Assembly: GCF_000143415.4 (NCBI RefSeq)
Contig: NW_003314291.1
Span: 1,530,517 to 1,594,516, forward strand
DNA: 64,000 nt
Reading direction: 5' to 3'
DNA from: Selaginella moellendorffii
Lineage: Eukaryota; Plantae; Lycopodiophyta
Under the pieces are notes generated by a model, which did no database searches, had not been told where the DNA came from, and saw only the letters and a list, made by a program, of their open reading frames with translations. Shown one piece after another: positions 23,982-43,310 of the stretch; the stretch's first letter is position 1; every line of letters begins with the position of its first letter. Position numbers and translations under genes: made by a program.

Positions 23982-26900
23982 TGAAACGAACAAGAGAGCG
24001 AACCCTAGGCCAACCTCCCAACCCTTAAGGCGTTACGGCCTTAAATCCCACAGGCCATGGAATATTCTCGGAATATTCCCGTGGTTCGTGTCATTCTCCC
24101 CTCCCTCATGACCCAGCCACATACGGTAGCCTCGAGAAGCTAAACGAGCCTCAAATGAAGGGAGTCCAAGGCAATACGGCCATGGAGAAAAGATGTGCAA
24201 ACGGCAACACCAACGTCGCAACAAACGGTCACGAAAGAAAGAAAGCAATACAGCTTTCTCACATGACAATACGGTCATGGAAAACAAGAGAATGAGAATA
24301 GAACAAACGGCTCAAATCATATAGCAATCCTGCTATAAAACTCAATTCTCCCCTTCCTCAGGAATGTCATCCAAGTCATAACCAAAACTCAGAAACACTC
24401 TTTTCACGTCATCCTCAGTTTCCCATGTAGCTTCGTCCATGGAATAACCATTCCACTGAACTAACAACTCCCTAGTTGTTTTCCGGCGTGTTTTCACCAA
24501 TCTTTGAGCAAGAATATTGGCCGGACCAGCCTTCTCTGCATCAATCTCTGGAACCTGGATGATGGACTGATCCACAATATCACCAGAGTGCAAACACACT
24601 TTAAGCTTGCTCACATGGAACGTTGGATGAATCTTTGAACTAACTGGCAAGTCCAAAGTGTATGCAAGATCCCCTACACGCTGTAAAATTGTCCAAGGTC
24701 CACAATACCGTGGAGACAACTTAGCACTGCCACCTCCTTTTAGAGACCGTTGTGCATCCGACAGCTTAAGGAAAACCTTGTCACCAACTTTGTACTCTTG
24801 ATGACGACGATGCTCATCAGCCAATCTTTTGTCTCGTTCTTGAGCTTGCCTCATGTTCAATTTTGCCAACTCAAGCTTGTCTTGCATATCCTCCAGGAAA
24901 TCACAAGCATGAGGAACCCGAACCAAAACCAAATTCAAACTCACAGGAGACCTAGGCTCATAGCCATACATCGCCATAAAAGGAGACATGCCAATAGCCG
25001 ATTGATGAGCGCTATTGTGAGCAAACTGAAGCAAAGGCAAGTATTTTTCCCATACTCCCTGTCGAGTCAAGTTTCCCACAAAAGACCGTAGCATATCTTC
25101 TAATAGTTGATTCATGCGCTCTGTCTGCCCATTAGATTGTGGATGCTCACCACTACGCATGCTCAGTTTAGTCTCTAGTTTTTCAAAGACCGTTTGCCAA
25201 AACTTGGACGTGAACTTAGGATCCCGATCACTCACAATGTCACCTGGCAAACCATAGAGACTGAATAACCGGTCTACAAACAACTGAGCAAGTTCAGAAG
25301 CTTTTATCGTTGTCTTCACAGGGAAAAAGTGAGCCATCTTCGTCAAACGATCCACAACAACCCAAATAGCATCATTTCCTCGAAAGGTTTTGGGCAAACC
25401 AGTGATAAAGTCCATCGAGATGCTATCCCACTTATTCTTGGGTACACGTAAAGGATGATAGAGGCCAGCGAGCTTCTGATGATCAACCTTGACCGCCTGG
25501 CAGGTCAAACAACCACGTACATACTTCTCAACATCTGACTTCATCCCAGGCCAAAAGAAATGCCTCTTCACCAACATATACGTTCTCAATACCCCCGGAT
25601 GCCCAGCACTTGGCACATCATGACACTCAACCAAAATCCGTTTGATGAGTTTATCAACACGAGGAACCACAACACGTCCCTTCTTCACTAGGATTCCATC
25701 TCGTATTTCGAATGACGAAAACTTGTCACTCTTTAAATCTGTAGAGGCGTCCCTCAACAAAACCTTCGCGCGAATATCAGTGATGAAGGAGTCAAAGTCA
25801 ACAAACTCCTTAAGCTCATCCAAGAGATCGCTGGATAGCTTCACAAACGAGATAGAATTTACCATCCTGGATAATGCATCAGCCACCTTATTATCACCTC
25901 CATGCTTGTACCGGATCTTAATAGACATTTCCTGCAGGAACTCTTGCCAACGAGCAAGACGGCCTCGAAGATCCTTTTGTCGACTGAAATATTGGAGTGA
26001 TTGATGGTCTGAATCCACATGGAAGTCCGATCCATATAGATAATGTCGCCATTCCTTCACAGCAGCAATCACAGCATATAACTCTTTATCTCGAGTAGGC
26101 CAATTCCGCTGTGTGGCATCAAACTTATGGCTCATGTACGCAAGAGGATGCCCAACTTGAAGCAAAACGGCTCCAATAGCAATGTCACTTGCATCTGTCT
26201 CAACCACAAGAGGCTTTTCAGGATCGAAAATCTTCAACACCGGAGCAGAGATACAACACTGCTTCAAACGTAGAAATGCCACTTCACACTTCTCATCCCA
26301 ACCATAAATAGTAGCATGTTTTGACATATTCTGGAGAAGATCAGTTAAAGGGGCTGCTATCCCTGAAAAGTCCTTCACAAATCGTCGAAAAACTCTAGCC
26401 ATACCAAGGAAACTACGGAGATCATGCACTGTTGAAGGTATAGGCCAATCAACCACGGCCTGAATCTTTGCAGGATCAGCTCTCACTCCATGTACCGAAA
26501 TCAAATGCCCGAGATATCCAATCTCCTCTAAAAAAAACTCGCACTTGGATAACTTCGAGTAGAGCTTGTTGTCCCTCAAAAGTTGTAAAACACTTCGCAC
26601 ATGCATCTCATGTTCCTCCATGGAAGAGCTGAATACCAGGATATCATCAAAATAATCAATTGCAAACTTTCCCAAGTAAGGTTGTAGAACTTGATTCATC
26701 AATCTCTGAAAAGTTGCAGGAGCATTTGTCAAACCAAATGGCATCACTAAAAACTCGTAGTGACCTGTCCTTGTCCGAAATGCAGTTTTCGGAACATCCT
26801 CGGGCTTGACACAAATCTGATGATATCCTTGCCTCAAATCAATCTTTGAAAAATATCGAGCACCACGAAGACGATCGAGCAAATCATCAATACGAGGGAT

Positions 26901-29117
26901 CGGGAACATATTCTTCACTGTCCTATCATTCAATCCCTTGTAATTCACACAGAGACGCCATGTACCATCTTTCTTTTTGACCATCACCACCGGAGCAGCC
27001 CAAGGAGACTTGCTGATCCGTAACCACCCTTTCCGAAGGTATTCAGCAAGCTGCCTATTAATCTCCTCATCTTCAGCGGGACTAGTATGAGTCGGTTGTC
27101 GCTGAAAAGGAGTAGCTCCAGGAACCAAGTCAATCTCATGCTGAATTCCACGTTCTTGAGGCAAACCATCAGGTAACTCATCCGGAAATACGTCACGGAA
27201 CTCCTCGTGAATGGAATCCACCTGTGCCTCATGCCCACGAACGTACTCCAAATCAGACATGATCATATTAGAAAGAAACTGGTACACCACAAAAGAATTA
27301 GCTATCTCATGCATGCATGTCACCAACTCCAAAGCGTTAATCAATGGAGTATCACTATTGTCTGTCCCGACAATCTCTTTGATAGTGCCACCAACTTCGA
27401 TATGCAGAACATTACGCTCCCAATCGATTCTTGGCTTNNNNNNNNNNNNNNNNNNNNNNNNNNNNNNNNNNNNNNNNNNNNNNNNNNNNNNNNNNNNNNN
27501 NNNNNNNNNNNNNNNNNNNNNNNNNNNNNNNNNNNNNTGTCATAAAACCATTCCTTCCCAAGAATAACGTCTGTGCGACCAAGATCCATAACCTGAAACG
27601 AAGGATGGTCGAGAATCCCTTGAATCGTCAAAGGAACACTCGGAGCCCATTCACCGTAAACACGAGTGCTATGTCCATCTGCCATAACCACCTCGTAGAT
27701 TACTGAACTCTTTTCCACAGGCAAACCAAGTTTCTTCACCACCTTGGAGCTCAAAAAATTGTGTGTAGCACCTGGATCGAAAAGAATACTAACAGCATGT
27801 CCTTGAATGTCCCCCTTGGCCTTCACAAGTTGATTGCGCATAGAACCATTAATCTCTACAGAGTTGATACAAACTCGAGACTTAGATTCTTGAATTTTTG
27901 CCACAGGGTGTGGAAGAGCCACCACAGCAGATGCCTGAGCTGTATCCACGATGGATTCCACCACATTCACCTTAGCATTCTTTGATCCCTTCACAAGAGG
28001 ACAATCTTTGCCATGATGTCCAGCCTTATGACAACGAAAACAATTGCCCTCCACCTTGTCCTTCTCTCGTTGGTCTAACCGATGTCTTTTTGCCTCATTG
28101 CCATCTCCACTCTTCGAGCTACGACGAAGCAACGGCCGTTTCTTCCCTGAAAATGAAGTATTGGTGGGTTGGTCATCACGTTGACCACCCCGGAGACCAT
28201 CCTTTTGACCAAAGTTGACCGAGTTGACCGACGGTTTGGGCGAAAAGATTTGAGCCTTAGTGATAGCATCAGTCAATGTTGCTGGAAAATCCTTCTTGAC
28301 CTTCTGCTGCACATCCATCGAGCTCAATCCTTTGATAAAACATTGCACCTTTAGTAGCTCATTATAGGTGCCCGTGAGACTAAGGCAAAGATCACGGAAC
28401 TTGCGGGCATACGCATCCAAAGACAAAGTCCCCTGCCGGATCTTTAACAACTGATTCACGAGATCAACCTCTTCAAACTTCTTGACAAATGAAGCACGGA
28501 AAACCTTTGTCAAATTAGTCCAAGAAGTCGACGTTGGATTAGCTTTGATGTAGTTCTTCCACCACGAAGAAGCATGGCCCGAAAGCTTCGTCACAAAAAA
28601 ATCTATCTTTACCTTATCCTCACAAGGATTGTGAGACCAACAACTTTCCCACAATTCCAACCAAGAATCAACCTCTTGACTATCACAAACATCCGGTGAT
28701 GATTTCCATTCCACGATACCATAATCCTTGGCATGCTTGACATACCAATGGTAATCACGGACATGAGATTGATTCAACCCTTGAGGGTTCATGCGAAGCA
28801 AGAAATCCTTAATGAGATTGACAGAATCCTTAACCTCCTTTATGTCGCTCTGAACCGCAGAAATCTGGCGTCCTTGCCGCACAACGACATCATCAAGAGT
28901 CTCTTCCGCATCATCATGGCTATCCTCACTAACGCCATACTCCTCATCAAGATCAATATCTTGCTCACCCGCCATCCCCAAAAGAACGTGCTGCTCCGAT
29001 ACCAATGAAACGAACAAGAGAGCGAACCCTAGGCCAACCTCCCAACCCTTAACGCGTTACGGCCTTAAATCCCACAGGCCATAGAATATTCTCGGAATAT
29101 TCCCGTGGTTCGTGTCA
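23982..29117 (-). mobile_element. Compact, apparently intact Ty3/gypsy chromovirus (Reina-like), family B
   Basis: 112-bp LTRs 29006-29117 and 23982-24093 (2 mismatches seen), TSD ATTAA, PBS TGGTATCGGAGC at 28993-29004, PPT at 24094-24107. Confidence 0.96.
24342..28975 (-). CDS. Gag-Pol polyprotein (gag, CCHC, PR, RT, RNase H, IN, chromodomain); probably a single ORF across the N gap
   Basis: [43 protein letters not shown] and [16 protein letters not shown] motifs. No internal stops outside the 100-N gap at 27438-27537. Confidence 0.92.
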
Positions 29118-38072: not shown

Positions 38073-40096
38073 TTATTTCTCTAAAACAAAATGCAGTCTT
38101 ACTAGAGATTGGATCGGTTGTGATGTTCGTTGTGCTATGTATATTTCCACCAGAATTCCCTGCATTCACAACATGTGATAAATTCGTTGCCACAAGTAGA
38201 AGCTCACCTCCATGTCAGCTTCGTATTGCTGCAAAAGCTTCAAGTATGTTGTGCTCTCCATTTCCTGCTTCATTGCTTTGCCTTGCGACATAAGAACAGC
38301 AACACCTGCGGCACAGGGAACTCCCGATCCGAGAGGCGTAAATAAATTATGCCGACTCACCAGTCTCTTGTCTTAATACGCGTGCAATCTGAAGCAAAAC
38401 AAAGTTTCTTCACACATCAAACAAGGAGAAAGAAAATACAAAGTAAACTACCTCCAGAGTAACTTTTGGACAACGCCAATCGCGAGCCTGTGTACTTCCT
38501 AATACAAAACACAGAATCAAACGCAGCCATGCGTGAAGTGTGAGACTTCTTACCACAGCGAACACCAAAGGGCATGTCACAGATGACCCAGTCCACACAT
38601 CCGGATCGCAAAGGCATGAAAGTAGCATTCCACTGAAGTATATCGCATGCGTCACTTCCTGTAATAAGAAGAAAAGCAACAAACCAGTTGAGCTCAAGAA
38701 TACCTCGAGCATTTTCTCCAGCTGCAGCCACAGCGGACGGAGAAATATCCCCACCCAAGCACAAAACTTGTCCACGGAAGCAATCCGCCGCTTCTAGAGG
38801 TATAGTTCCACATCCACACCTAAGGAGCACACCACCGTAGAATAGAAAACAATCACAATCTATAATTCACGTACATGGGGTCCAGAACGACGTCTCCGCA
38901 TTTGATGTGTCCAAGTTGCACAAGAGCATACGCCACACTGCGTTAAAAACTGTCACAATTGCGGCTCAAGCAGTATAAATCTCGGCAAAAGCTCGCCACA
39001 CACACCTAGGCCTCAAGGACGTTGGAACCAGCGCCTTTCTGTAGAGCCTTTTTGAGTAGAGCTAAACGAGATCACCAAATCAGAATTGGACACTAGATGC
39101 TAGGAAAAAACGTGATTGCTGACCTGAGAATCTGAGCGACTGGGCCTAGGAGCTTTCCTGCCATCGACAACTTGCTCGGTTGGTTTACTATAGAGCGAAA
39201 GAACCAGGTAGAATAAAACAACAAAAACGTTTATCTCTTACCCGTAGAGAAGTCCAATCGCTACAAGAAGCTCGGAATCTCTCAGCCATGCAAACACTTC
39301 CACTGCAAACAATGTACTTGAAGACGAGGCAAAACCAGGCATCCACACAAACCGTTATAGCACCTCATGTCCGCCGGCCAGTTATGGAGATTATAAACAC
39401 TTTCTCCCAGCGCAGCTGCGATTAAGTGAAAGCCGCACTGCGTTTCTTGTCATTTTGATGAAAACGAACATACCTGCAACATCCACCGACGAGAATGGGT
39501 GTTTCTTCATCTTGAGGCACTTCCGTTCACAGGTTACTCGAAACGTAAGCGGTGATTGTAGCATCCTGTCTTGCATCGCCTGCCACTTTTGAAAGAGCAG
39601 CAAAGCCGGCTCCCATGAAATCTGCAAAACGCAGTGAGCTCTGAGTGATTTGAGTTACATTACCTTGGAAGCCAAGCTTTTCAAGTAAGAAAGAGCGCCA
39701 TCCTTGTGCACAGGAACATCCTTTCAAACAAGTTCATGTCAATTATACCTCTTCTTTTTCTCTATTGAAACTTACGAAATCACACACACACCTTGAAGTG
39801 TCCGAGATAAGCGTACACATTGTCTGCCGCTCTCAGCTTGAAAACATCCTACCATTCATTCAACAATGTCAGCCAATCACGAGAAAGTTCTCTTCGACCT
39901 CTGGCGACGATTCAGTTTGGAAAAGAATGCCTCCATAAAAGCTCACTGTGGCCTCTTCGATTCTCGTCCCTGGTAGCCTTTCAACCTGGAGTGGTCGCGA
40001 TTTGGGATGAATGGATCGATGAAAGAGAAAAAAGATTACCTCCGAGACGAGCACTCTCTCGACCCCCGCCGCGCAGGACGCATAATAGAGCTCCAT
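38073..40096 (-). CDS. THUMP-domain RNA guanine-N2 methyltransferase (THUMPD2/THUMPD3/Trm14-like), multi-exon
   Basis: MELYYASCAAGVE, TFRVTCER..HPFSS, LRP..AYAL, VVLDPM-CGCGTIPLEAA, VDWVICDMPFG and ARVL motifs on short GT-AG exons. The 3' end is approximate. Confidence 0.82.
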
Positions 40097-40195
40097 AGCT
40101 AACTAGCTAGGGCTCTTGATAAGCTAGGAACTTCCTTTCTTTCAAACAAAAATAGAAATACATGGTCTCGCGAGAGAAAATCACAGTAAGGAGGC

Positions 40196-42624
40196 CTAGA
40201 GCACCAATGGAGCTCCCAAGTGCAACGTTGGCTCTGCCGCCACGCGCTCCAGAATGTCGGGAAAGTGGAAGACTTCCTTCCTCTCAAATCCTGGGAATGA
40301 CGAGCAACTCTCCTCAGCTGGCTCGTTCAAATCAATCCCACCACTGCCACCACCGCCGCCACTGCCACTGCTCTCCGGCATCAGCTGGAGCGGCTCCGAC
40401 GAGTCTTCGTTTAGATCGATCCCGCTGGTGCTCAGATCAAGATCAATCCCACCGCTACTGCTCTCTGGCATGAGCTGAAGAGCGCCTCCTGGTTCAGCTC
40501 TTGTGAAAGGCAGCGAAGAAGCCTCGGAGAGAATCGAGTCGAAGCGGTGGATAAACCATGGAGTGTCGTCGCGGGGCTCTGTGAGTGAATGGTATGCCAG
40601 GATCTGCCAGTGGGAGCAGCTGAGCGAGAAGCGGTGCTGGTCCTCGCAAGACTCGTCCGTGCACGAGTACCTGTGCTCCTCCAGGCACCGCCCGTCTTTA
40701 CAGCCAATCACTTCCACGTAGAACCTCGAGTTTGTGTGCTTGGCCCGGTAAGCCAGGCTGCTGAGCCCATCGATCGTCACTTCACACCCTTGGACGAACA
40801 AGTGCTTGAGATGCAGCTCGCTGTTCAAAGCGATTTCTTGCATGCCTGCGTAAGAAACCAGTGTTAGTTTCGCGTCCCCACATAGTTACCACTCACTTTC
40901 ATCACCGAAACGGCACTTCCGGATTTCAAGCCTCTGTAGTTTGTTGCAGCCGCGAAGAACTGGTACCAATCCCATGTCGCTGCTGCCACAGTGGACAAGG
41001 GTCAGCACCCTGATCTTCTTTCCATATTCGCCAATTGCAGCCACGCCCGCGTCGGTGAGGAACTCAACATCCGCCTGGACGTCGAAGCAGAGCGTCAAAC
41101 GGTAGAGCGATCTGCATTCCCGGACGAGTGCGGTCACCCCTTCGTCCAGGCACTCCCATGGCATCTGCGAGAAATACCAATGTAAGAGCTTCCAAACACA
41201 CTAGTAACTTACGTTCTCGCCCGTGCTACTTGACTGGATGAGACATATTCGCACGTCCATCAAGTTCGGGCAGTTGTAAGCGAGCGCATAAAACGCTTCG
41301 TTGGTGATGAAAGATGGATAGAAAATGAGCTTCTGCAGGTTTCTACAGCCTTGTGCAACCGCCATAAGGCCGGCGTGTGTCACCACCCCACCGTCAATTG
41401 CAGAAGGACTCTCAACGACAAGCCTGTGTAAGTCTTTGCAAGAGTTCCCCAGCGCTTGCAACCCGTGGTCTCCAGCCAAGTCTAACACCTGGAAACATGA
41501 AAGGAACATGGAGGTGATCAATGAGACCTGGACCTGGAAAGTTGAAACACTTACCCGAAGATACTGCAGGTTAGGACAGGCTCGAAGCACCTCCGCTATC
41601 TCCACCTCGGTAAGGTTGGAGTAAGATAGGTCGAGCCTCGTCAAACGAGAACTGACCGACATAAAAGCGTGCATTCCATCGTCCACTAGATCGAAGATGC
41701 CGGACAGCCCCTCCAGTGCAGTACACTTTGCCAGTAACGACGTCTCGGAGTTGCTGTTGATCCGCTCGATCCCAAGGTCACTTAAGTTGGAAGAGCACTT
41801 TTGCAGCACAGGCAAAAACCGCTCGGAGTTTTGAGTCTCGGACTCCCACAGCTTTAGCAGCTTGCAACGCTCGGCCAACTTCACCAGCACCGCTTCATCC
41901 ACGTCGCCCATCTCTATAAGTGACAAGTCCAGGTATTCGAGGGCGGGACACGAGTTTACCAGGTCCTTGAGCCATTTGGTATCACTAGTGTTATCAATCA
42001 TCGACTGTGCAAGGCCCAAGTGGGTAAGATTCCTAGAAAAAGAAAGAAAAAAAATCAGAACTTGGAATGAGCTCTAAGAAACACAAAGGAAGAGAGGAAG
42101 AGTAGGAAACCAAAAGCGACAACTTACTTGCAAAACTTGGCGAGTGCTTGGAGACCCTTGGTGCTAAAGCCGGAGCACTTGTCAAACTGCATGATCTTGA
42201 GGTTGGGACCACAGGCAGCACAGAGCTCCTCGATCTGAGAGTCGGTGATCGTCATCCTCTTGATCCGGAAGCGGTTAAGCTGGGGATGAGCTTTGATAGC
42301 TGCAATCCAAGGTCCTGCGTGGCCGGCCCAATCCCTGGGGAGTATGTCGAAATCCACGAGCCGAGGATTCCCTTTGATGGTAATCGATCTCACGCTGGGA
42401 AATCGCTCGAACAGCTTCATGGGGTTGACAGCGTACATGTTGTAGACCAGGACATGATGCCTCGTGCGAGCTTCCAGCTCGTGAAACCGCTTGCACACTG
42501 CCGAGATAGCATTTCTCTCCACGGGCTTCTTGATGTAGCCAAAGATCTTCTCCAGGACGTCGTCGATGCAGCACAGCAGGCCCCTGGAATCGTCAGGCAC
42601 CCGCCTCCTGGTGGATTCAACCAT
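40196..42624 (-). CDS. Divergent TIR1/AFB/COI1-family F-box LRR protein (COI1-leaning) with a C-terminal EAR-like extension; exons 42624-42128, 42032-41555, 41488-41213, 41164-40897, 40845-40196
   Basis: F-box DDVLEKIF..ERNAISAVCKRF, KGNPR..F..W.GHAGPWI, IKRM, CSGFSTKGL, AVAQGC, ITNE, LEIR.C, LFVQG and ILAYHSL...R.D.P. All four introns are GT-AG and frame-consistent. Confidence 0.9.
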
Positions 42625-42670
42625 CTCTCCCCGGTCAAAAAACCCCTATGCCTCCAAATCTCGGCTTCCT

Positions 42671-42805
42671 ACACCACACAACTCCTGGACATCGCGAATC
42701 GACACTCAAATCTCACCCCTGGCAGACCTACACCACAGAACTCCTGGACACCGCGAATCAACACTCAAATCTCACCCCTGGCAGAAGAAATCTCACCCCT
42801 GGCAC
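42671..42805. repeat. 59-bp tandem repeat (2 copies plus a partial) just upstream of the F-box ATG
   Basis: ACACCACA.AACTCCTGGACA.CGCGAATC.ACACTCAAATCTCACCCCTGGCAGA repeated. Confidence 0.85.
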
Positions 42806-43310
42806 AGAACCTCGCCTGGAACACGGCGCTACACACCAGATCCTTGGAGATGGCCAGCTTACTCCATAGCGCCCACGGAATCCCACCCTCTGCTAGCAAT
42901 CGAGCGAATCCGCTTGAGTATCTAGAAAGCGCCACATTCCCCTCGACCCCTTCCCATCTATCTTCATCCACAGTCCCCTACCGTACTCTTCCAGCCAGTC
43001 CATGAGACGAGCGCCATATGGCCCAATATCGTACTAGCTATGTCTTTAAAGAACTCTTTTACCAATTCATTTTTCCGGACATGCGCAAGGGACCACCACT
43101 CATATGAAAACCCGTCTTTTTTGCGGGGTGGTAAATACGTCGCGAGCTCGATTCCCTAGAACACCATATTCCCTTTGATCAGATTTTCTCGCCGAGAACA
43201 AAGCTTCGTCTACCAATTTCTCAAGGAAAAGTCCAACTACAAAGAAATAAGCGTGTGTTAAGTAGCTCGATATAAAAAAAAGAGTTCTTTTTTTTCTTTT
43301 CCTTACACCT

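What the first reader, a model, noticed from the sequence alone, without database searches (positions are those of the whole stretch)
40196..40520. COI1/TIR1-like receptor with a novel tail of tandem EAR-like motifs
Seen: after the normal family C-terminus (ILAYHSL..R.DTP.F) the ORF continues for over 100 aa with a duplicated unit LQLMPESS followed by GIDLDLS, GIDLNED and, after a Gly/Ser linker, GIDLNEPA. Known: DLNx(x)P and LxLxL are EAR motifs that recruit TOPLESS co-repressors. They normally sit on the repressor side (Aux/IAA, NINJA, some JAZ), not on the F-box receptor. Inference: an F-box that recruits TPL itself, either as a receptor-repressor fusion or by targeting TPL complexes for ubiquitination.
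Basis: partly seen in the sequence, partly recalled or inferred. Interest (0 to 1): 0.78.

Follow-up and report, generated by a model that had tools for sequence, protein, structure and literature searches.

The report
Orphan F-box receptor with EAR-like tail
The spikemoss gene SmXFB1, an orphan cousin of the auxin and jasmonate receptors, really does carry an expressed 117-residue floppy tail whose repeated short motifs resemble co-repressor docking sites, but whether they bind the co-repressor is untested.

Summary
On the minus strand lies a five-exon gene whose RNA-supported model (722 aa) is letter-for-letter Selaginella moellendorffii XP_002976462.2. This is SmXFB1 of Prigge et al. 2020, a member of the XFB clade, a third branch beside TIR1/AFB and COI1 whose function is unknown.

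After the family's C-terminal cap (residues 588-605) the last exon runs on for 117 residues. It holds LQLMPESS twice and GIDLDLS, GIDLNED and GIDLNEPA. Spliced transcript contigs from four studies cover the tail without a joint. Both alleles are transcribed.

The tail is predicted disordered and matches no Pfam family. It has no detectable relative except its own allele. Two moss XFB proteins have shorter, unrelated extensions. Nineteen distinct TIR1/AFB-type genes end 21-24 residues after the start of the cap.

The motif copies differ by 7 nucleotides, all silent. This suggests selection on the peptides.

By strict definitions only one EAR motif (DLNEP) is present. IDLDL is IxLxL, and LQLMP only resembles a WUS box. 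TOPLESS docking is the best guess (about 0.35-0.4) but is not shown.

This scan had already noted the same feature on the other haplotype (s1-402718).

The parts
42127..42624 (-). Exon 1 coding part (ATG at 42624; residues 1-166): F-box and TIR1-type 'Transp_inhibit' domain
   Evidence: Pfam F-box_5 E 3e-13 and Transp_inhibit E 3e-13. PDB TIR1 3e-35 and COI1 7e-35. Exon ends come from the RNA contigs.
41553..42031 (-). Exon 2 (LRRs)
   Evidence: Joints 42031/42127 and 41486/41553 appear in contigs of 4 runs. TIR1 1.6e-9.
41213..41486 (-). Exon 3 (LRRs). It holds the Arg equivalent to TIR1 R403 / COI1 R409.
40897..41164 (-). Exon 4 (LRRs)
   Evidence: The old 509-aa model EFJ22722.1 stops in the intron after this exon.
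40550..40845 (-). Exon 5, body part: last LRRs, a Cys/His-rich insert (40598-40703, residues 555-589) and the family C-terminal cap ILAYHSLTEPRDDTPWFI (40550-40603)
   Evidence: Alignment A1. AF2 pLDDT is below 50 for residues 555-589.
40199..40549 (-). Exon 5, tail: residues 606-722. Acidic (pI 4.1), rich in Ser, Gly, Glu and Pro, predicted disordered.
   Evidence: Continuous in RNA contigs of 4 runs. pLDDT is below 50 from residue 615. No Pfam family beyond residue 512. No relative other than its allele.
40457..40480 (-). LQLMPESS copy 1 (residues 629-636)
40430..40450 (-). GIDLDLS (residues 639-645), an IxLxL EAR-like site
40403..40423 (-). GIDLNED (residues 648-654), DLN without the proline
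40367..40390 (-). LQLMPESS copy 2 (residues 659-666). It differs from copy 1 by 3 nucleotides, all silent.
40316..40339 (-). GIDLNEPA (residues 676-683). It holds the only strict EAR pattern, DLNEP (DLNxP), and follows a Gly/Ser run (40340-40366).
40196..40198 (-). Stop codon TAG. It is CAG in the other haplotype, which adds 5 residues.
40135..40195 (-). 3' UTR as far as the RNA contigs reach
   Evidence: Contig ends at 40135 (X2) and 40150 (X1)

Best explanation
The gene is SmXFB1 of Selaginella moellendorffii, an F-box/LRR substrate receptor of the TIR1/AFB-COI1 family that belongs to the orphan XFB clade.

Shown:
- It is transcribed and spliced as a 5-exon mRNA encoding 722 residues.
- The body has the F-box, the TIR1-type domain, an LRR solenoid and the family cap.
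- The last 117 residues are an extra, acidic, predicted-disordered tail built by internal duplication. It carries two LQLMPESS and three GIDL(D/N) sites.

Inferred from silent-only divergence of the copies: the motifs are kept by selection as short linear docking motifs.

Inferred from resemblance only: they dock a TOPLESS/TPR co-repressor. GIDLNEP matches DLNxP, IDLDL is EAR-like, and LQLMP resembles the TLxLF WUS box. The order 'WUS-box-like, linker, EAR-like' is the one seen at the C-terminus of WUS-type proteins. Docking would bring the co-repressor, or a complex holding it, directly to the SCF-XFB ubiquitin ligase, instead of through an EAR-bearing substrate such as Aux/IAA, JAZ/NINJA or SMXL.

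My odds: tail real and translated 0.9. Motifs functional 0.7. Partner is TPL/TPR 0.35-0.4.
For: - Gene model: spliced GT-AG joints in contigs of 4 runs from 4 studies, with the last exon unbroken from 40844 down to 40135-40242 in three runs and, in X4, covered by two abutting contigs.
- The joined model equals XP_002976462.2 (P0001) exactly.
- Family.
- XFB identity: the locus is named SmXFB1 in supp5.nex of PMC7048394. The best non-self hits are XFB-clade moss proteins at E 1e-116 to 1e-123, against 4e-82 for an AFB-like protein.
- Both alleles are expressed: all 16 RNA variants are alleles of the other haplotype, two of them inside the tail.
- There is no indel in the 2169-nt coding sequence between haplotypes, against 141 gap columns in 651 aligned flank positions.
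- Disorder: pLDDT about 21-36 (means of 10-residue blocks) over residues 621-722.
- Selection: the LQLMPESS pair and the GIDLNE pair differ at 7 of 42 nucleotides, all silent. P is about 2-5e-5 under neutral change. The linkers between the motifs have diverged beyond alignment.
- Literature: EAR is defined as LxLxL or DLNx(x)P (PMC9956375). LxLxL, DLNxxP, R/KLFGV and TLxLF all recruit TPL/TPR (PMC3443911). A WUS box plus an EAR-like motif jointly bind TPL (PMC6305195).
Against: - No binding or repression data exist.
- There is only one strict EAR pattern and no strict LxLxL or TLxLF.
- EAR patterns are frequent by chance (PMC6283911).
- The motifs are absent from the C-terminal extensions of two moss XFB proteins. 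BLASTP of tail against tail gives E 0.25.
- No other lycophyte sequence could be obtained, so conservation across species is unknown.
- The silent-change test was made on stretches chosen because they are identical, which inflates its significance. After a rough correction, P is near 1e-3.
- The stop codon is polymorphic, so the extreme C-terminus is not constrained.
- The AF2 alignment had only 5 rows, so low pLDDT is weak evidence for disorder.
Confidence: 0.38

Rival explanations
1. The tail is a functional array of short linear motifs, but its partner is not TOPLESS. It could be another docking partner. It could be a SUMO-like binder, as in the tandem SIMs of RNF4-type ligases. It could also act within the molecule as a pseudo-substrate that folds back on the LRR pocket and gates substrate access.
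For: The evidence for selection on the motifs says nothing about the partner. The sites fit the strict EAR and WUS-box definitions poorly. Tandem acidic, Ser-flanked hydrophobic motifs in a disordered region of an E3 subunit recall SIM arrays (own knowledge).
Against: IDLDL and IDLN place hydrophobic residues at positions 1, 3 and 5. That is the amphiphilic EAR pattern, not the 3-of-4 hydrophobic core of a SIM (own knowledge). AF2 gave no confident docking of the tail on the body, although no PAE was available.
Confidence: 0.27
2. The tail is a neutral, fast-evolving disordered extension with no specific function. It arose by read-through or stop shift and by slippage-type duplication, and its EAR likeness is coincidence.
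For: C-terminal extensions in the XFB clade vary in length (48, 88 and 137 residues from the cap) and in sequence. The tail has low-complexity Gly/Ser runs and short tandem repeats. The stop codon is polymorphic. No relative of the tail was found in 1.8 billion representatives. EAR patterns are common by chance (PMC6283911).
Against: Seven silent and no replacement differences in the 14 motif codons, with silent-site divergence so high that neutral copies would not keep 14 identical residues. A 117-codon open frame is retained in both haplotypes without indels, even across the Gly/Ser run.
Confidence: 0.22
3. The tail is an annotation or assembly artefact. It is not part of the mature mRNA or protein, because it is spliced out, lies in the UTR, or results from a sequencing frameshift.
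For: An older gene model (EFJ22722.1, 509 aa) lacks the last exon altogether.
Against: Contigs of four independent RNA data sets join exon 4 to exon 5 and run through the tail to beyond the stop without a joint or indel. The second haplotype has the same frame. The RefSeq model agrees. The old model simply read into intron 4.
Confidence: 0.03

Closest known systems
XFB clade of F-box/LRR proteins (PpXFB1/2, Ceratodon, Pohlia, Sphagnum, Takakia, Selaginella acanthonota; Prigge et al. 2010 and 2020)
   Same: This locus is the SmXFB1 row of the published alignment. It is 39% identical to a Ceratodon XFB (P0005) and a second moss-like XFB (P0004), both over about 82% of its length. It has the same domain order and cap motif.
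   Different: The moss proteins end 48-88 residues after the start of the cap, and their extensions are unrelated (they share YC[ST]PLYSE) and lack EAR-like sites. Selaginella has 137 residues with five repeated sites and an extra Cys/His-rich insert.
TIR1/AFB auxin co-receptors (with Aux/IAA and TPL)
   Same: F-box_5 and Transp_inhibit domains and the LRR solenoid. The equivalents of TIR1 K74, F82, K113/R114, R403 and R436 are kept. RefSeq even names the protein 'AUXIN SIGNALING F-BOX 2'.
   Different: It is equally distant from TIR1 and COI1, and an AFB-like protein scores lower than the XFBs. TIR1 R344 is Val and S438 is Thr here. In the auxin pathway the EAR motif sits on the substrate (Aux/IAA), not on the receptor. 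TIR1/AFB genes end 21-24 residues after the start of the cap.
COI1 jasmonate co-receptor (with JAZ, NINJA and TPL)
   Same: The same fold family. The equivalents of COI1 R85 and R409 are kept.
   Different: COI1 R348 is Val here. COI1 has no tail, and TPL is recruited through NINJA or the EAR motifs of JAZ proteins.
C-terminal repression module of WUS/WOX proteins (WUS box TLxLFP followed by an EAR-like motif)
   Same: The order of a Leu-x-Leu-hydrophobic-Pro site, a short linker and an EAR-like site in an acidic, disordered C-terminal region. In HDL both sites together bind TPL (PMC6305195).
   Different: LQLMP has Ala or Pro in place of Thr and Met in place of Phe. The carrier is a ubiquitin-ligase subunit, not a DNA-binding protein. 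The similarity covers only a few residues and is untested.
MAX2/D3 with D53/SMXL (strigolactone pathway)
   Same: An F-box/LRR receptor pathway that ends in removal of an EAR-bearing TPL adaptor. MAX2 gave weak PDB matches to exon 3.
   Different: The EAR motif is on the substrate D53/SMXL, and MAX2 belongs to another F-box/LRR family.

Membership tests
TIR1/AFB-COI1 superfamily of F-box/LRR receptors | N-terminal F-box of the TIR1 type (PF18511) | tested here: met
   E 3e-13 on exon 1 and 1.5e-12 on P0001, above the curated cut-off
TIR1/AFB-COI1 superfamily of F-box/LRR receptors | Transp_inhibit domain (PF18791) after the F-box | tested here: met
   53 bits against a cut-off of 33
TIR1/AFB-COI1 superfamily of F-box/LRR receptors | LRR solenoid and C-terminal cap motif (hydrophobic-Y-x-S/T ... 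PR-x-D-x-P) | tested here: met
   The AF2 model shows a regular strand/helix repeat over residues 57-553 with pLDDT mostly 70-95. The cap aligns with relatives.
TIR1/AFB-COI1 superfamily of F-box/LRR receptors | Basic residues that hold the inositol phosphate and the ligand carboxylate | tested here: inconclusive
   Equivalents of TIR1 K74, K113, R114, R403 and R436 and of COI1 R85 and R409 are kept. TIR1 R344 / COI1 R348 is Val and TIR1 R401 is Asp, as in COI1. Read from pairwise HMMER alignments only.
XFB clade | Groups with moss and lycophyte XFB proteins rather than with TIR1/AFB or COI1 | tested here: met
   The best hits are XFB members P0004 and P0005 (E 8e-123 and 2e-116), against AFB-like P0006 (4e-82). 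P0005 equals the Ceratodon XFB row, and this locus is the SmXFB1 row, of the published alignment. UniProt calls the allele 'XFB'. No tree was built here.
TIR1/AFB auxin receptors proper (the RefSeq name 'AUXIN SIGNALING F-BOX 2') | Closer to TIR1/AFB than to other clades | tested here: not met
   TIR1 and COI1 score alike exon by exon. All 73 environmental TIR1/AFB loci score higher with AFB-like P0006 than with this protein.
EAR-motif proteins that recruit TOPLESS | LxLxL pattern | tested here: not met
   None in the tail. IDLDL is IxLxL.
EAR-motif proteins that recruit TOPLESS | DLNx(x)P pattern | tested here: met
   One site, DLNEP at residues 678-682. It appeared in 0.3% of shuffled tails. 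GIDLNED lacks the proline.
EAR-motif proteins that recruit TOPLESS | Motif conserved in orthologues | tested here: inconclusive
   Absent in two moss XFB proteins. The allele is identical at all sites. No other lycophyte sequence was reachable. The paralogous copies within the tail differ only by silent changes.
EAR-motif proteins that recruit TOPLESS | Physical binding of TPL/TPR and repression activity | not testable with these tools
   No multimer prediction or experiment was available.
WUS-box (TLxLF) repression motif | T-L-x-L-F(-P) | tested here: not met
   ALQLMP and PLQLMP keep L-x-L and P but have Ala or Pro for Thr and Met for Phe. The pattern is taken from PMC3443911.

The most novel reading that the evidence does not exclude
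SCF-XFB docks the TOPLESS/TPR co-repressor directly through five tail motifs. The receptor itself, rather than an EAR-bearing substrate, would then link a (still unknown) ligand to the co-repressor. It could do this by ubiquitinating TPL complexes or by acting as a ligand-gated repressor adaptor. That would be a short-circuited version of the auxin, jasmonate and strigolactone signalling design, and a first functional handle on the orphan XFB clade.
Probability: 0.25. Interest if true: 0.8.

Novelty: new variant of a known kind. Interest (0 to 1): 0.55.

Why it matters
The XFB clade is the third branch of the TIR1/AFB-COI1 receptor family and has no known ligand, substrate or phenotype (PMC7048394). 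In all three well-understood F-box hormone pathways, the receptor removes an EAR-bearing adaptor that tethers TOPLESS to transcription factors. A receptor that carries such motifs itself would point to the process XFB touches, namely co-repressor complexes. It would also give cheap, direct tests: two-hybrid assays with TPL, and motif mutants. If the motifs bind something else, they still mark a selected docking region that could be used as bait to find XFB partners.

Tried and rejected
- The word search with the last exon alone found nothing. The length filter excludes full-length kin.
- The whole-library HMMER search with the last exon returned only the protein itself and two unrelated repeat proteins, P0002 and P0003.
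- The word search restricted to tail residues 596-722 returned only the protein itself.
- The protein atlas search on the tail gave no usable hit.
- The PDB search with the last exon gave no hit.
- The metagenome scan gave 73 plant loci. All are of the TIR1/AFB type and none is XFB. They served only as a control for normal C-terminal length.
- Literature searches for XFB, PpXFB, gene ids, TLP1A and the motif strings found nothing on XFB function or its tail beyond Prigge 2020. Prigge 2010 is not held.
- The published alignment file is stored with its rows cut, so the C-terminus of the S. acanthonota XFB could not be read.
- MAFFT's apparent match between the Ceratodon and Selaginella tails (PGFGELQ... 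against PGGALQ...) is not significant.
- Haplotype dN/dS has no power in the tail, which holds only 4 differences.
- The SIM (SUMO-binding) reading was considered and ranked low because the hydrophobic spacing does not fit.
- A first version of the simulation script timed out and was rerun.

Full report
**What is there.** The finding lies on the minus strand. The ORF at 40196-40843 reads through the family's C-terminal cap (ILAYHSLTEPRDDTPWFI) and continues for 117 residues to TAG at 40198-40196. The tail contains LQLMPESS at residues 629 and 659. It also contains GIDLDLS (from 639), GIDLNED (from 648) and, after a Gly/Ser run, GIDLNEPA (from 676).

At the DNA level the motifs sit in an internal duplication. 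There is a 32-nt repeat at 84% identity spaced 90 nt apart, and a 15-nt repeat at 93%. Three [ILV]DL[DN] sites never arose in 20,000 shuffles of the tail. Given the duplication, that shows common descent of the copies rather than function.

**Gene model and expression.** Contigs of four runs from four studies, all 'organism A', were laid on 39000-43200. They carry four GT-AG joints on the minus strand, so they derive from RNA.
- The exons are 42709..42127, 42031..41553, 41486..41213, 41164..40897 and 40845..40135.
- The last exon has no joint and no indel. One contig runs through it in three runs; in X4 two abutting contigs cover it.
- The tail is therefore transcribed and not spliced out.

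**How the searches were done.** I searched the exons one by one by reference. I sent no hand-joined sequence to any search tool. The joined translation was made only inside a script, to count residues. It proved letter-for-letter identical to database protein P0001, which I then used by its id.

**Identity.**
- P0001 is XP_002976462.2 of Selaginella moellendorffii, automatically named 'AUXIN SIGNALING F-BOX 2'.
- Its cluster holds P0007 (727 aa, UniProt D8TEP2, gene 'XFB') and an old 509-aa model that stops in intron 4.
- P0007 lies on another scaffold, with a Kelch gene upstream and a UPF0020 gene downstream. Its downstream flank aligns with the window, so it is most likely the second haplotype.
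- The coding sequences differ at 22 sites with no indel. Six residues change and the stop becomes CAG, adding 5 residues.
- All 16 variants seen in the RNA contigs are alleles of that haplotype, two of them inside the tail. Both alleles are therefore transcribed.

**Family.**
- Pfam finds F-box_5 and Transp_inhibit.
- TIR1 and COI1 structures match exons 1-4 about equally well.
- The best non-self relatives are XFB-clade proteins: a moss-like transcript P0004 and Ceratodon P0005, both 39% identical. They score ahead of an AFB-like protein.
- The alignment published with Prigge et al. 2020 contains this locus as 'SmXFB1'. Its other XFB rows are S. acanthonota, Physcomitrella XFB1/2, Ceratodon, Pohlia, Sphagnum and Takakia.
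- The paper calls the clade 'of unknown function' and says it is conserved in mosses and some lycophytes.
- Several pocket and inositol-phosphate residues are kept: TIR1 K74, F82, K113/R114, R403 and R436, and COI1 R85 and R409. TIR1 R344 / COI1 R348 is Val. A small-molecule pocket is therefore possible but not shown.

**Is the tail unusual?**
- Nineteen distinct TIR1/AFB-type genes recovered from plant DNA in metagenomes end 21-24 residues after the start of the cap motif.
- The two moss XFB proteins run on for 48 and 88 residues by the same count. Their extensions are unrelated to this tail and have no EAR-like site.
- SmXFB1 has 137 residues by that count.
- No Pfam family covers anything beyond residue 512.
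- A HMMER search of 1.8 billion representatives with the last exon found only the protein itself and two unrelated repeat proteins. A tail-restricted word search found only the protein itself.
- AF2 models the solenoid with confidence. It gives pLDDT of about 21-36 (means of 10-residue blocks) for residues 621-722 and about 30-36 for most of a Cys/His-rich insert at 555-589. The alignment had only 5 rows, so this is weak evidence. The tail's composition (pI 4.1; rich in Ser, Gly, Glu and Pro) points the same way.

**Are the motifs under selection?**
- The two LQLMPESS copies differ by 3 nucleotides, all silent.
- The GIDL copies use ATT/ATC/ATT for Ile and CTT/CTA/TTG for Leu.
- GIDLNE copies 2 and 3 differ by 4 nucleotides, all silent.
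- Seven silent and no replacement changes in 42 nucleotides has a probability of 2-5e-5 under neutral change.
- The stretches were chosen because they are identical, so the true significance is lower, perhaps 1e-3.
- The silent divergence is high enough that neutrally drifting copies would not keep 14 residues. The linkers between the sites have diverged beyond alignment.
- I read this as conserved islands in a variable disordered region, which is the signature of short linear motifs.
- Comparing the haplotypes adds nothing. The tail holds only four differences: one replacement, two silent and the stop.

**What the motifs might do.**
- By the usual definition (LxLxL or DLNx(x)P; PMC9956375, PMC6283911), only DLNEP qualifies. 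IDLDL is IxLxL, and GIDLNED lacks the proline.
- LQLMP resembles the WUS-box repression motif TLxLF. PMC3443911 lists TLxLF with LxLxL, DLNxxP and R/KLFGV as TPL-recruiting sequences.
- The order 'LQLMP, linker, IDL(D/N)' occurs twice. The comparison with WUS is my own lead, not a test.
- Raw EAR patterns are very common by chance (PMC6283911, Table 1).
- TPL docking is therefore the most specific hypothesis, but I put it at only 0.35-0.4.
- Rival readings are another partner or an autoinhibitory role (0.27), a neutral extension (0.22) and an artefact (0.03).

**Earlier work in this scan.** A note on another piece of the same genome (s1-402718) reports the same feature on what I take to be the other haplotype, and reached a similar reading. 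It gave me the lead 'spikemoss XFB'. I then checked the identity, transcription and silent-change evidence independently.

**Verdict.** The gene is known but orphan. The tail is not described in the literature I could search. Its co-repressor reading is plausible, testable and unproven.

Noticed in passing
window 40598-40703 (minus strand; residues 555-589): A Cys/His-rich insert of about 20 residues lies between the last LRR and the cap. The region carries 5 Cys and 3 His, with C-x4-C and C-x4-C spacings. The insert is absent from the moss XFBs and the AFB-like protein, and AF2 models it with low confidence. It could be a metal-binding knuckle. Four of the 22 coding differences between the haplotypes cluster here (D575N, Q576H, R578A).
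   Followed up: partly
window 40196-40198: The stop codon is polymorphic between the two haplotypes. TAG here is CAG in GL377745.1, which adds the 5 residues QASLL.
   Followed up: yes
window 40846-40896 and protein EFJ22722.1 (P0008): The original 509-aa gene model of this locus reads into intron 4 and lacks the whole last exon. The RefSeq name 'AUXIN SIGNALING F-BOX 2' is also misleading, because the protein belongs to the XFB clade.
   Followed up: yes
window 42668-42785: A 59-nt tandem repeat (2.0 copies, 94% identity) lies in the 5' UTR or promoter just upstream of the ATG. The RNA contigs break there.
   Followed up: no
window 41487-41552: Intron 2 (66 nt) is in frame and has no stop codon, so ORF 41201-42019 reads across it. 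If retained it would insert 22 residues. No retention was seen in the four RNA assemblies.
   Followed up: partly
window 39000-40100 (minus strand): The neighbouring gene starts within about 40-100 nt of the XFB 3' end. It has at least eight very small introns (42-71 nt, all GT-AG). On the other haplotype its counterpart is a 439-aa UPF0020 (PF01170) protein.
   Followed up: partly
L003-L075 (metagenome contigs): Seventy-three contigs in JGI and ENA metagenomes carry TIR1/AFB-type plant genes, so host plant DNA is plentiful in these 'metagenomes'. All of them end 21-24 residues after the start of the cap motif.
   Followed up: partly
window 24342-29017 (minus strand): Two long ORFs of 1000 and 558 aa lie end to end, probably a retrotransposon polyprotein. 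They were not examined.
   Followed up: no
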